Shown in pieces: positions 69-63,384 of a DNA stretch of 64,000 bases. Origin of the DNA: Blastocystis sp. Blastoise. Lineage: Eukaryota; Protista; Bigyra: Opalinata. The stretch covers positions 248,001-312,000 of the forward strand of contig JBBPEB010000018.1 of assembly GCA_039096225.1 (NCBI GenBank), read 5' to 3'. Both the position numbers and the translations under genes were made by a program. The notes beneath the pieces were generated by a model. The model was not told the DNA's origin, did not search any database, and saw nothing but the letters and a program-made list of their open reading frames with translations. Every line of letters starts with the position of its first letter. Positions within the stretch are counted from its first letter, which is position 1.

Positions 69-1784
69 ATATGCTCATTTTTCTGAAACTCTTGATGGTA
101 TTCCTGTTATTCGGTATATATAAGACTATATAATTCATACCTATTATCTATATGTGTAATATATTCATTATATAGTGCTTTTGGTATGCAAAATTATTTC
201 ATAAATAATAACAATAATAAACTTGATTACAATCAACGTGCTTATTTCTTACAATTTTCTGCTAACTGTTGGCTTGGACTTCGATTAGAATTCGCTGGTA
301 CTTTAATTGTATTCTTTTCCTCTTTCCTTGCTGTACTCGGCAAAGAAACTGGAAATGAACAATTCATAGGTTTAGCAGCTTGTATATAATATATTATTAT
401 ATTTATTATTATTAATATTACTATTATTATAAATTACTTTTTATAATATTCTATATATATAATAATATATAGTATCTATTTCTTATGCATTAAATGTTAC
501 TCAAACACTTAATTGGGTGGTACGAATGGCAGCTGATATGGAAACACAAATTGTTTCTGTAGAAAGAATTAATAGTTATGCTCAATTACCTAAAGAAGCT
601 CCTGAGCATATAGAAGGTCATATTCCTGAAGAATCCTGGCCTTCCCGCGGGGATATAACATTTAAGAATATGTCTATGCGATATCGTCAAGAATTAGAGC
701 CTGTTCTTCATCATATTAATGTTTCTATTAAGGGAGAAGAGAAAGTAGGTGTTGTAGGAAGAACAGGAGCAGGTAAAAGTAGTTTAATGTTAGCATTAAT
801 GAGAATTATAGAATTAGATGAAGGAGAAATAGATATCGATAATATGAATATAAGTGAAATAGGATTACATGATTTAAGAAGTCGTATAGCTATTATTTCC
901 CAAGAACCTGTTTTATTTAGTGGTACCATAAGAGAAAATATAGATCCTTTTGATGAATATAAAGATAGCGATATATGGATTGCTTTAGAAGTATATACTA
1001 TTTATTATTATTATATTATTGTTTTTTTATTATTATATTATATTATTATTATTATATAATTATTTATTATTTTTTATTATTTTTATTATTTTTATTATTT
1101 TTTATTATTATATTATTTATTATATTTTTTTATATATTAATAATAATCATTATTTTCAATAATATACCACATGAGCTCTTTCAACATATAATATAATAAT
1201 ATACTCTATAGCGTGCCCATATGAAAGATGTAATTGCTTCTTCTGATTTAGGTTTATCATCACTAGTAGAAGAGCATGGTAATAATTATAGTGTTGGTCA
1301 ACGTCAGTTATTATGTATAGCTAGAGCATTATTGCATCATACAAAGATTATCTTAATGGATGAAGCTACTGCTTCTATTGATGTTGAAACAGATCTTAAA
1401 ATACAAAAAACAATGAAAGAAGAATTTAAAGATTGTACTGTGATTACTATAGCTCATAGAATACATACTATTATTGATAGTGATAAAGTCATGGTTTTAG
1501 AAGCTGGAGAAGTTAAAGAATTCGAACAACCAGCTCTACTCTTAGAAGATCCTAATACGTATATATATATATTTGTTATTACATTTTATATTAACTATTT
1601 CTATATATAAATATATATATTTGTTATTACATTTTATATTAATTATTTCTATATATATATATATATATATTTGTTATTACATTTTATATTAACTATTTCT
1701 ACATATATATATAGAATATTCTCTGGATTAGTGAATAAATGGCAAAGTGCAAATGAACAACATAATCCTTCTAATGATGAATAA
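69..1784 (+). CDS. ABCC/MRP-family ABC transporter, 3' part (end of TMD2 plus NBD2); multi-exon, begins upstream of the window
   Basis: Spliced exons give YAHFSETLDG..VIRAFG, VSVERI, Walker A GRTGAGKSS, signature NYSVGQRQLLCIARALL, Walker B IILMDEATAS and IAHR. Introns are GT-AG. The last exon, 1715-1784, ends in TAA. Confidence 0.95.
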
Positions 1785-2297
1785 TCATTATTTATATTCT
1801 TATTTTAATAAAAATATCTTACGATTGTATCTATTTTTTAACTTATTTGTTATGGTGTTGTTTACTATTTTTTTTTTATCGAGTAGCTATATTGTTCATA
1901 AAATACATTTATTTAAATAAAAATACCTTATAAATTGTTTTATCGAAATCATAAATTATGCTTATAATAAATCATGCTCATTTTTTGCTACATGTTTTCA
2001 TATATACCATATACTTTCTAAAATTTGTTGTCAAAATTAGCTAGATTAAAACTTATTGCTTACTTTTCACGAAATCGTAATTAGAGAAACATCACAAAAA
2101 CTTCAAAACTATCTTTTGACAAAAAACAAAACAATGGTATTGAAGGAATAGAACAAATACATACATACAAAAAACAAAAAGACATAGATTATAATTAAAT
2201 AGGAGCATATATATAGACAAAAAAAATGAGAAATATGAATACTTAATAGAAATAAAGATGTATATATATATAGTAATAAAGAAATACCGTAAATTTC

Positions 2298-60500: not shown

Positions 60501-63384
60501 TACACGTGATCGTCTTCCTAAAGGTACATTATCTACAAATACTATACCTACAGAATCATTTACTACTTCTACTTATCGTTCTATGACTATTCCTCTAACA
60601 CATATTTCTATTGATACAAATACTATTGCTATTGGTATCTTCCATTCATCTACAGCTACTCCTTCTACTTTAGATTTTAATGCTTGTATTCGTTTTGTTA
60701 CTACTATGGGTAGTTTAGGTAGATTATGGAATACTGAATTATCTTCTGATCCTGTTTCTCCTTCTATTAATTATCTTACTGATATTTATTCAGATACTGA
60801 TTGGGGATATACTTCTCCTTCTGCTGTTACTATAGATATTATTATGGATTTCACAGAAATAAGACGTGAATATGTAAATAAATATTGTCTTACTTCAAGT
60901 GCCAATAATGCTAAAGATCAAGATCCTTCTGAATGGGAATTATTTGCTTCTCAAGATGGAATTAATTTTATTTCTGTAAGTAATGCTACTAATATCGAAT
61001 TCTCAGATAGAAATCAACAACGTTGTTTCTATTTAACTTCATTAACAGAACCTTATCGTGTTTGGAAATTACATCTTCTTAATATATATAATCCTAGTTA
61101 TATCACTTTTGGTTATTTTTTAAGTGATTTAATGTTTGATATGGTTGATAATAGTCAACTTATTCCTCCTCCACTTGTTTATACTCCTAATGAAATCAAT
61201 GCATTTATTTCTCTTAATTTCCCTTCTTTATCTCATTCTTCTTCTTTATATAATAATTTCCATATTACTCCTGATCTTCCTTATCCTCTTTCTTTAGATG
61301 CTTCTACTGGTCTTATTAAAGGAATACCTATAGCTTCTCTTCCTACTACTACTTATAATATTACAGCTCAATCTCCTCAAGGTGATATTAGTTCAACATT
61401 ATTAGTAATTACTATTACTCCTTGTCAACATCCTAATATTATGTTCTCTTTATATATATATACTGGATGGGAAGATTCTAATATACGTTTAAAGTTAACT
61501 GATTCTGATAATACTGTTCTTCTTAATACAAATAGTTTCCAATCTATGATGGAAGTATGGTATCCTTTCTGTCAACCTAATGGTATATATACAGTTACTA
61601 TTTCTGATTCATATAATGATGGTTGGGATGATGCTTATTTCGAAGTTCTTTTAGAAGATAATACTCGTATATTACAAGGTTCTATAGGTGGTACTGAAGG
61701 TGAACGTTCATTCCCTATAGAATTAAATTATATATTAAATCCTAAATTAACATTATGGACCTATCATATCAGTACATCCGATGTTGATGTTGCTTGGAAT
61801 ACTATTACTTATGTTCCTACAGATTGGAAAGAAAGCATACCTGGTGGTTTTGATAAACCTGATTCTATTACTCAATATTATCGTTCATTATTTACTATGC
61901 AAAATAAAGAACTTTATGGTTCAGCTGTTATATCTATTCGTACTCGTTATGGTGTTATTGCTTATATAAATGGTGTTGAAATCTATAGAGATAATGTCCC
62001 TGGTGGTTATTTAGCTAGTAATATCTATTGTTTTGAAGAAAGAGAAGAAACGATTAGTTTAGGAACTGCTTTAGGTGTTGCTTTTAGTTCTATTGTTAAT
62101 GGAAATAATGTTTTAGCTTTTGAAATTCATACAAGTAATAGCACAACTATATATACAGATTTTGATGCTTCCTTAATGTTAACAAGTGCTAATAGTTATC
62201 GTGTATTAGATGGAAGAGCTTATACTAATGATGAAGCTAATGAAGATTATGTATATTCTATGTTTGATAATATTAAAGGAACTATATTTACTTCAATGAA
62301 TACAAAATGTGCTGGTGAATATGTTGGTTATTATTATCTTTATAATCGTAAAGAATATATTAATAGTTATACTATAATTACTGGTAATCGTTGTAATCGT
62401 AAGAATCCTACAGGATGGATGTTAGAAGGTAGTAATGATAATGATAATTGGTCAGTATTACATCATGTTACTGATTATGAAGTAACTACATATAGTAAAG
62501 AAAGTACATTTGATTTCTATAATGAACGTGTATTTAGTAATTATAGACTTGTTATTACTCAATGTAATAATTTAGTTATTGGATCATCTGTTTCTCCTAA
62601 TGAAATGTTTTGTGGTGATGAATATGAAGAACAAGGATATCAATTTGCTGAATTAATGTTATTTAGTAAAAAAGTATATTATAGTTGTGCTCCTACTGCT
62701 GATGGGTTTGGAGGTGCTATGGAAGGTGCTTATGCATATAAAGATTGTCCTTCTTATTATCAAGGTAGAATTGAAGCTTTATGTACTAATGGAAAATTAG
62801 GTACAAAGAATACTTTTTGTACTCTTATGAAACCAACTATTATTAATTATACTCACGAAAATAGTACACTTTTATTTTATATTGGTCAAGACACTTCATA
62901 TATACCTGCTATCAATGGTGCTGAATTAACATGTATTAGTACTCCTAGTCTTCCTGAAGGTCTTGTATTAGATAAATCAACAGGTAGTATATCAGGTGAT
63001 CCTACTAATGAATTTACTAATACATTAGTTACTATTTCTTGTAGTAATACTCAAGGAAGTATTTCCACGGTTATTTCTCTTTCTTCTGTTCATACTCCTG
63101 GTCTTGCTTTATGGATTTGGATAGTAATTGCACTTGTCATTGTTATTATCATTGTAGTTGTTATTGTTATTATTGTTAAAAATATTCATTCTTCTTCTTC
63201 TTCTTCTAGTGATAATTCTACTAAGAAGAAGGCTCATAATACATTAACTAAAGAAGATGATAATAATAAGAATAATTCTGATTATGTTAGTATGAGTGGA
63301 CCCAATAAGAATAATAAGAATAATCAAGAAAAAGAAGAAATCAAAGGTAATGGGTCTACTATTGTTGATATTCCTTCACAATAA
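57585..63384 (+). CDS. Second Ig-like/discoidin multi-module type-I membrane surface protein (paralogue of 35862-43096)
   Basis: Signal peptide, many 5' introns, then a ~3.45-kb terminal exon. Same repeated modules (YINGxEIYR, DPxxWELxAS, LPEGLVLDKSTGSISG); TM helix WIWIVIALVIVIIIVVVIVIIV. Confidence 0.9.

What the first reader, a model, noticed from the sequence alone, without database searches (positions are those of the whole stretch)
642..63073. Dispersed GC-rich quasi-palindrome TTCCC-RY-GGGAA recurring every few kb and overriding codon bias inside exons
Seen: 12-mers centred on CGCG/CGTG/CACG occur at 642 TTCCCGCGGGGA, 4425 TTCCCGCGGGAA (part of the perfect 14-bp palindrome 4424-4437), 7425 TCCCCGTGAGCA, 11084 TACTCGTGGGAG, 17240 TTCCCGTGGAAA, 21022 TCCCCGCGGGTA, 23008 ATACCGTGGGGA, 26387 TTCCCGTGGGAC, 28601 ATCCCGTGATTC, 34633 TTCCCGTGAAAA, 36901 CAAACGCGGGAA, 37517 TTCCCGTGATTA, 44208 CAATCGCGGGAA, 45582 TTTCCACGGGAA, 50678 TAAACGCGGGAA, 58243 TATTCACGGGAA, 59576 TCCCCGTGGGAA and 63062 TTTCCACGGTTA. 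I count 12 loci carrying TCCCGYG on either strand; a rough base-composition estimate (G=C about 0.10-0.13) predicts about one or fewer. Most sites lie in exons of unrelated genes, on both strands and in different frames. There they force G/C-ending codons (TCC CGC GGG, CAC GGG, CCC GTG GGA, ATC GCG GGA, CCC GCG) in genes that otherwise favour A/T-ending codons, so the signal acts at the DNA level rather than the protein level. Established: the geometry matches the COE/EBF site ATTCCCNNGGGAAT and overlaps the CSL (GTGGGAA) and E2F (TTTCCCGC) motifs, but such factors are not expected to seed gene bodies this way; cyanobacterial HIP1 is a known frame-independent iterated palindrome. Inference: this is a genome-wide iterated-palindrome system, either sites for an abundant dimeric chromatin or replication protein, or sites maintained by a sequence-specific methylase plus biased repair that resists AT drift.
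Basis: partly seen in the sequence, partly recalled or inferred. Interest (0 to 1): 0.88.

Follow-up and report, generated by a model that had tools for sequence, protein, structure and literature searches.

The report
Protein-binding words written into Blastocystis genes
In a tortoise-gut Blastocystis with very AT-rich DNA, a GC-rich 14-letter palindrome and several other transcription-factor-like words appear inside genes almost wherever the protein allows, against codon bias and apparently changing amino acids, a pattern known from bacterial uptake sequences but not, in the papers I could search, from a eukaryote.

Summary
Real, genome-wide and larger than reported. The genome is Blastocystis 'Blastoise' (probably Rus-B; 33.3 Mb, 23% GC). 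All 18 sites are present; 15 are exonic. TTCCCRYGGGAA has 453 loci against 0 in the reversed control. The motif is a graded dyad, AT-TCCC-RY-GGGA-AT. Exons hold 84 sites against 7-10 in synonymous shuffles (cross-validated), in all frames. About half to three quarters of the best protein-permitted places carry one, compatible peptides are 2-4x over-represented, and sites per gene follow CDS length.

New here: other words behave alike (E2F-type TTGGCGGGAA 286 vs 1; TGACR-N7-YGTCA 483 vs 48; E-box). Samples from subtypes ST1, 3, 4 and 7 show no enrichment.

A HIP1-type methylase is not supported: the only C5 enzyme is DNMT2-like, no Vsr was found, and the Dam copies leave GATC unenriched. A whole-site advantage fits far better than GC shielding. 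Best reading: sites of an unidentified homodimeric protein, fixed by a gene-blind, selection-like bias. Conversion drive is slightly favoured over selection; the two were not separated. First readers noted this word in other windows of this genome.

The parts
641..654 (.). Dyad site (23 bits) in an ABC-transporter exon, codons TCC CGC GGG (PSRGD)
4424..4437 (.). Perfect 14-bp dyad, non-exonic (intergenic), 25 bits
8459..8472 (.). Additional dyad site (16 bits, TAACC half) in a long exon, NNHGN
11083..11096 (.). Dyad site (15 bits), non-exonic in my model
16346..16359 (.). Additional site with a non-RY centre (16 bits) in an ISWI exon, NSLGS
17239..17252 (.). Dyad site in an ISWI/SNF2 exon, VFHGN; orthologues in ST1/3/4/7 read [FL][HY]GTK
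21021..21034 (.). Dyad site (22 bits) in an ABC-transporter exon, PTRGD
23007..23020 (.). Dyad site, FPTVF
26386..26399 (.). Dyad site in an ABC-transporter exon, MSHGK
34632..34645 (.). Non-exonic CACGGG variant in poly-T/poly-A context; like copies 110-145 bp upstream of first exons elsewhere
37516..37529 (.). Dyad site (TAATC half) in a 6.5-kb single exon, IITGI
44207..44220 (.). Dyad site in an Hsp70 exon, TIAGM
45581..45594 (.). Dyad site in an Hsp70 exon, FFHGKE, where solved Hsc70 chains have FFNGKE
58242..58255 (.). Dyad site, VFTGI (13 bits)
59575..59588 (.). Dyad site (21 bits), LPVGI
63061..63074 (.). Dyad site, ISTVI
20648..20657 (-). Second word, E2F-type TTGGCGGGAA, in an ABC-transporter exon (LAGN)
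8106..8127 (+). Two E2F-like TTGGCGGG words in an exon, antisense to the gene
60459..60466 (+). E-box-type AGCACGTG in an exon

Best explanation
The word is the binding site of a sequence-specific homodimeric DNA-binding protein. The protein is not identified; that it is a protein site is inferred from the graded dyad profile. Something gives the better-binding allele a small advantage at any locus, whatever the gene, and the advantage grows with affinity. Sites therefore get completed wherever amino acids already supply a scaffold, so they show mainly in exons, and nearly neutral amino acids are nudged toward the word. The same bias acts on the words of several other factors. SHOWN: enrichment, frame independence, near-saturation, gene-blindness, several motifs, absence from the human-subtype samples, and a whole-site fit of 13-18 log units. 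INFERRED engine, my commitment: transmission bias in this diploid. The protein-covered allele escapes breaks or lesions and serves as the template in gene conversion, a eukaryotic counterpart of the drive proposed for bacterial uptake sequences. I put about 0.8 on 'protein sites under a whole-site, selection-like bias' and about half of that on drive as the engine.
For: Graded palindromic matrix. Halves pair no more than when shuffled, so it is not a hairpin. The AT at +-5..7 is kept even when sites are chosen by the core alone (G/C 11 vs 24 expected). Where the protein allows a site of 22 bits or more, 18 of 24 are realised against 2.0 expected; cross-validated, 7/15 and 13/15. Sites per gene are Poisson with CDS length (chi2 94.7 on 114 df) and uniform along the CDS (p 0.19). 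Fold enrichment is of the same order in non-coding DNA (8 vs 0.35). Compatible peptides number 24 vs 5.5, cross-validated 15 vs 5.2 and 15 vs 3.7; Hsp70 has H for N at a site. Unrelated words behave alike, and E2F/DP domains are encoded. The whole-site model has nll 2444-2453 against 2565 for exact GC-to-AT shielding and 2727 for the null. All isolates are reported diploid (PMC12129017). Uptake sequences show the same gene-blind doubling of peptides (PMC2817400).
Against: No binder was found: COE, CSL, CG-1, KilA-N, zf-BED and Zn2Cys6 gave no match (most controls blank). Drive and selection are mathematically equivalent in these fits, so nothing here favours drive directly; the preference rests on gene-blindness and on unrelated factors all showing the same sign. 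Human subtypes are diploid too and show no enrichment in 8-48 kb of coding DNA each. There are no recombination or polymorphism data. The roughly twofold G+C rise at 9-13 bp is not predicted by this model.
Confidence: 0.4

Rival explanations
1. Natural selection for occupancy of gene bodies. In a 77% AT genome whose introns are 11% GC, exons are the cheap place to keep GC-rich sites, and each bound general factor gives a small additive benefit (activation, nucleosome barrier, replication or chromosome organisation).
For: The same whole-site fit. The E2F-type and E-box words are canonical and E2F/DP genes are present. A related CACGGG word sits 110-145 bp upstream of first exons. A/T choice leans to the consensus (129 of 209 vs 106 over two folds). 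Exonic sites (duons) have precedent (PMC13534478).
Against: No gene preference, no 5' bias and no even spacing. It needs cell-cycle and other factors all to be beneficial in any gene. The A/T lean can also arise from how permitted windows are ascertained.
Confidence: 0.3
2. Mutational footprint: a lineage-specific GC-to-AT pressure acts on naked DNA and bound proteins shield their sites, or binding blocks mismatch repair and changes the local mutation spectrum.
For: One cause would explain both low GC and several motifs in this lineage only. Third-position G and C both rise about twofold at 9-13 bp from the dyad; genome-wide, G/C at -11 is 333/906 against 291/906 at -23 (z about 2.1). Free choices inside sites shift 38-75x toward G/C. 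Competition between factors and mismatch repair is documented (bioRxiv 10.64898/2026.10.19.760246), and MutS genes are present.
Against: The exact stationary shielding model fits 110-120 log units worse than the whole-site model, even with unlimited protection (one start, 725 windows). The approximate version is also worse. A general cold spot would need exit rates 1e5-fold lower or more. The SSS flank test was flat (23 vs 23; insensitive).
Confidence: 0.15
3. HIP1-like system: a site-specific methylase plus biased repair writes the palindrome.
For: Palindromic, frame-independent, centred on CG in most copies; Dam-family genes exist in the genome.
Against: The only C5 match is DNMT2-like (best structures DNMT2; CFT motif visible). 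No PF01555 or Vsr match. GATC, GATATC and CGATCG are not enriched. The site is 14 bp and graded, the centre varies (GC, AC, GT, AT), and several unrelated words share the behaviour.
Confidence: 0.05
4. RNA-level element (hairpin or exonic splicing signal), or an assembly artefact.
For: Sites are about ten times denser in exons than outside.
Against: Half-sites do not covary. Asymmetric words occur on both strands equally (142 and 144). There is no pattern at exon edges. Non-coding DNA is enriched to a similar fold. Reading frames stay intact.
Confidence: 0.04

Closest known systems
DNA uptake sequences of Haemophilus and Neisseria (PMC2817400)
   Same: Hundreds to thousands of dispersed copies, many in coding DNA, poorly tied to gene function, roughly doubling the peptides they encode; molecular drive is the usual explanation.
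   Different: Eukaryote; palindromic graded dyad; several unrelated words at once; no DNA uptake is known here (own knowledge); overrides rare codons rather than following preferred ones.
Cyanobacterial HIP1, GCGATCGC (bioRxiv 10.1101/2024.09.10.611283)
   Same: Iterated GC-rich palindrome about every 1-2 kb, independent of reading frame.
   Different: HIP1 is a fixed 8-mer with cognate orphan methyltransferases. This is a degenerate 14-mer with no matching methylase or Vsr found.
COE/EBF site ATTCCCNNGGGAAT (PMC4512700)
   Same: Identical consensus geometry, including the outer AT.
   Different: The centre is restricted to RY (CC-GC-GG 28 vs 1.2; CC-AG-GG 2 vs 1.8; CC-CA-GG 1 vs 1.7). Halves TAACC, TAATC and TATTC are common. 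No COE domain was detected.
Exonic transcription-factor sites, duons (Stergachis 2013, as cited in PMC13534478)
   Same: Factor motifs inside coding DNA that shape codon choice.
   Different: Here the effect is 10- to several-hundred-fold, near saturating, blind to gene and position, and cannot come from protection against CpG methylation, as no DNA C5 methylase was found.
E2F/DP site TTGGCGGGAA
   Same: The second enriched word matches it (own knowledge of the consensus), and E2F/DP domains are encoded.
   Different: The main dyad has a 2-bp centre. The symmetric E2F-like word CCCGGG is not enriched (0 vs 0.8).

Membership tests
HIP1-type iterated palindrome | Strong genome-wide, frame-independent over-representation | tested here: met
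HIP1-type iterated palindrome | Fixed short palindrome | tested here: not met
   Graded 14-bp matrix with many half-site variants
HIP1-type iterated palindrome | Cognate DNA methyltransferase | tested here: not met
   Only DNMT2-like C5; no PF01555; Dam copies without GATC enrichment. An unusual target for the Dam copies is not excluded.
HIP1-type iterated palindrome | Sites are methylated in vivo | not testable with these tools
   Needs raw nanopore or PacBio signal
COE/EBF binding site | ATTCCC-NN-GGGAAT geometry | tested here: met
   consensus from PMC4512700
COE/EBF binding site | Free two-base centre | tested here: not met
   Only GC, AC and GT centres are enriched
COE/EBF binding site | COE DNA-binding domain encoded | tested here: inconclusive
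   No match, but the control genomes could not ring
CSL site | CSL protein encoded, and a monomer site GTGGGAA independent of a dyad | tested here: inconclusive
   No LAG1 match, control blank. The word appears as half of the dyad, and GCGGGAA and ACGGGAA are as common.
E2F site (main dyad) | Abutting halves without spacer | tested here: not met
   CCCGGG 0 vs 0.8. The separate word TTGGCGGGAA does fit E2F.
DNA uptake sequence | Over-represents the encoded peptides, blind to gene function | tested here: met
DNA uptake sequence | Sequence-biased DNA uptake and recombination | not testable with these tools
   No assay; not reported for Blastocystis to my knowledge
Duon (functional exonic factor site) | Occupied by the factor in vivo, with an effect on expression | not testable with these tools
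   Needs footprinting and reporter or editing assays

The most novel reading that the evidence does not exclude
A eukaryotic lineage in which protein occupancy itself biases inheritance: alleles that bind any abundant factor better win gene conversion or repair, so the exome becomes a readable catalogue of the cell's DNA-binding specificities and the proteome is bent toward their words without benefit to the genes.
Probability: 0.35. Interest if true: 0.93.

Novelty: new variant of a known kind. Interest (0 to 1): 0.82.

Why it matters
Codon choice and some amino acids in this genome are set by DNA-binding words, not by translation. This affects dS-based inference and reverses the usual expectation that stray factor sites are purged from genes. 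The effect is large (10- to several-hundred-fold) and is absent from the human-subtype samples, so cultured isolates give a natural contrast for a long-disputed question: whether exonic factor sites reflect selection, mutation bias or drive. It also yields binding motifs for an organism with few genetic tools, including two dyads with no assigned protein. The genome paper does not mention it, and a search for the exact words found no relevant paper.

Tried and rejected
Hairpin or cruciform: halves do not covary. Broad GC-biased conversion tracts: GC3 is at background beyond 14 bp. Regular spacing: CV 1.7. Methylases and Vsr. Loss of repair genes: uracil glycosylase and MutS matches are present. 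Candidate binders COE, CSL, CAMTA (CG-1), APSES (KilA-N), BED finger and Zn2Cys6: no match; only the KilA-N control rang, and short domains split by introns can be missed. A contingency argument for per-base shielding was absorbed by a graded whole-site model. One search timed out, one search was invalid (pruning artefact) and one search did not converge. The G+C-rich centre of TGACR-N7-YGTCA (SSS 57, WWW 34) looked like shielding but is dominated by AGGGT, so it may be preference.
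Full report
Source. The window is part of a 33.34-Mb, 34-contig assembly with 23% GC. Its proteins are named Blastocystis sp. Blastoise in NCBI. Size and GC match the tortoise isolate Rus-B of PMC12129017 (33.3 Mb, 23.1%); that identification is my inference. The paper reports all isolates as diploid and mentions neither methylation nor palindromes. I analysed the window plus 200 kb of another contig with an ab initio exon model (49% coding), and counted patterns genome-wide.

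Observation. All 18 words are at the stated places and TCCCGYG marks 12 loci, against about 0.5 by a Markov-2 model. TTCCCRYGGGAA has 453 loci in the genome and the reversed pattern none. A palindromic fit gives A-T-[TA]-[CAT]-[CT]-C-R | Y-G-..-A-T, about one site per 2 kb. Common halves are ATTCCC, ATAACC, ATCCCC, ATTTCC and ATAATC. The two halves pair no more often than shuffled halves, which fits a dimer on double-stranded DNA and not a hairpin. Only GC, AC and GT centres are clearly enriched between CC and GG. Fifteen of the 18 listed sites are exonic.

It overrides codon bias. Exons hold 84 sites of 14 bits or more against 7-10 after synonymous shuffling, in all three frames. With matrices trained on other DNA the counts are 43 vs 3.2, 38 vs 4.9 and 13 vs 0.7. 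Where the peptide permits a very strong site, 18 of 24 carry one (2.0 expected); cross-validated, 7 of 15 and 13 of 15. In Ser-[Arg/His]-Gly, TCC and GGG are each used 11 times in 23, against backgrounds of 6-7%. Permissive peptides are themselves over-represented (24 vs 5.5; cross-validated 15 vs 5.2 and 15 vs 3.7). At 45582 an Hsp70 reads FFHGKE where solved Hsc70 chains read FFNGKE. At 17240 ISWI reads FHGNR where ST1, 3, 4 and 7 read [FL][HY]GTK. These two cases are anecdotes.

It is blind to gene and place. Sites per gene follow CDS length (chi2 94.7 on 114 df) and are uniform along the CDS. Spacing is irregular (CV 1.7). Non-coding DNA has a tenth of the density but a similar fold excess (8 vs 0.35). 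So exons are favoured because amino acids supply a scaffold, not because the force is exon-specific (inference). A poly-T-flanked CACGGG variant lies 110-145 bp upstream of several first exons and may be a real promoter element.

It is not one word. With the dyad masked, exons are still enriched for E2F-type TTGGCGGG (12 vs 0.2), CACGTG (28 vs 9.6), TGACGCA (18 vs 4.2) and TGAC-N9-GTCA (7 vs 0.4). Genome-wide, TTGGCGGGAA has 286 matches against 1 and TGACR-N7-YGTCA has 483 loci against 48. E2F/DP domains are encoded. HSE, AP-1, CRE and CCAAT words are not clearly enriched.

It is lineage-restricted in what I could reach. The same test on loci from human subtypes gives ST1 11 vs 10.8 (48 kb coding), ST3 3 vs 4.7, ST4 3 vs 1.8 and ST7 2 vs 0.9, and nothing for the other words. 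At the Rus-B density the ST4 sample would hold about 19 sites. The samples are small and lie around one gene family.

Methylase model. The single C5 match is closest to DNMT2 structures and shows the CFT motif. PF01555 and Vsr gave no match while controls rang. Seven intronless Dam-family genes exist, the three read each beside the same intronless unknown gene. GATC is at expectation in exons (431 vs 426). HIP1 is a fixed 8-mer with cognate methylases; this motif is not.

What force? Third-position G+C is 5-7 times background at 1-4 bp from the dyad, below background at 5-7, twice background at 9-13 and normal beyond. This excludes broad GC-biased tracts. The flank effect is weakly seen genome-wide (333 vs 291 of 906). 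I fitted synonymous choices given the peptide. A whole-site advantage rising with occupancy gave nll 6705 (6693 with 70% of loci responsive); approximate per-base shielding gave 6725. With the exact stationary distribution, shielding of G/C reached only 2565 against 2444-2453 (null 2727). The fitted strength is 13-18 log units at full occupancy, too much for a plain mutational cold spot. The force is therefore selection-like and directed at the consensus. Selection and biased conversion give the same equations, so these data cannot separate them. I lean to drive (0.4 vs 0.3) because unrelated factors all gain, in any gene and at any position, without even spacing and at the price of amino-acid change, as for bacterial uptake sequences (PMC2817400). 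Against it, human subtypes are diploid too and show nothing, and I have no recombination data.

The binder is unknown. The consensus equals the COE/EBF site (PMC4512700), but the centre is restricted and no COE domain was found. CSL, CG-1, KilA-N, BED and Zn2Cys6 searches were also blank, mostly with uninformative controls. hAT-derived CGG-binding proteins (PMC8097297) remain an untested lead.

Limits. Codon-level statistics rest on 129 kb of coding DNA. First readers of other windows of this genome noted the same word; these notes are not independent evidence.

Verdict. A real, strong and apparently undescribed feature. It works like an uptake-sequence or HIP1 accumulation but fails the HIP1 membership tests. 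New variant of a known kind; interest 0.82.

Noticed in passing
G000 C23, C14, C13, C28, C15, C34 (L049-L051): Seven intronless Dam-family adenine methyltransferase genes, one with an internal stop. The three read each lie beside the same intronless ORF of about 250 aa with no Pfam or NCBIfam match, which suggests a multi-copy mobile or viral cassette.
   Followed up: partly
genome-wide; e.g. C2:107219, C2:111746: Second spaced palindrome TGACR-N7-YGTCA, 483 loci against 48 in the control, with a preferred AGGGT centre; binder unknown.
   Followed up: partly
C2:103345, 223887/223902, 237150; window 34635: Poly-T-flanked TTTCACGGG element, 110-145 bp upstream of first exons at the C2 places; TAACGGG occurs in similar places.
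   Followed up: partly
exons of the window and C2:100001-300000: Strong avoidance of A and T runs (TTTT 822 vs 1328, AAAA 1263 vs 1712) and of CTAG (188 vs 295) against synonymous shuffles; may explain the high use of TTC and AAG codons.
   Followed up: no
L021 (C34:404969-408412): DNMT2-like gene, the only C5 methyltransferase match, head to head with an RRM-like gene.
   Followed up: yes
window 43438-47115: Multi-intron, divergent cytosolic-type Hsp70 with several changes at conserved positions.
   Followed up: partly
window 35871-42383 and 59932-63381: Very long exons of large secreted He_PIG (putative Ig) proteins, a family with paralogues in this genome and in other Blastocystis.
   Followed up: partly
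window 19616-30210: Run of ABC-transporter exons on the minus strand with two nucleotide-binding regions, possibly one long ABCA gene or two in tandem.
   Followed up: no
window 53028-57191: Bacterial-like secreted protein with weak DUF1565 and PAN matches, interrupted by introns.
   Followed up: no
window 52630-52703: tRNA-Ile(AAT) gene; it accounts for the CGCGGG at 52669.
   Followed up: yes
C2 about 178700-195700 (L008-L010): A MULE-like and Ulp1-like stretch enclosed by long inverted duplicates of host exons (identical peptides on opposite strands).
   Followed up: no
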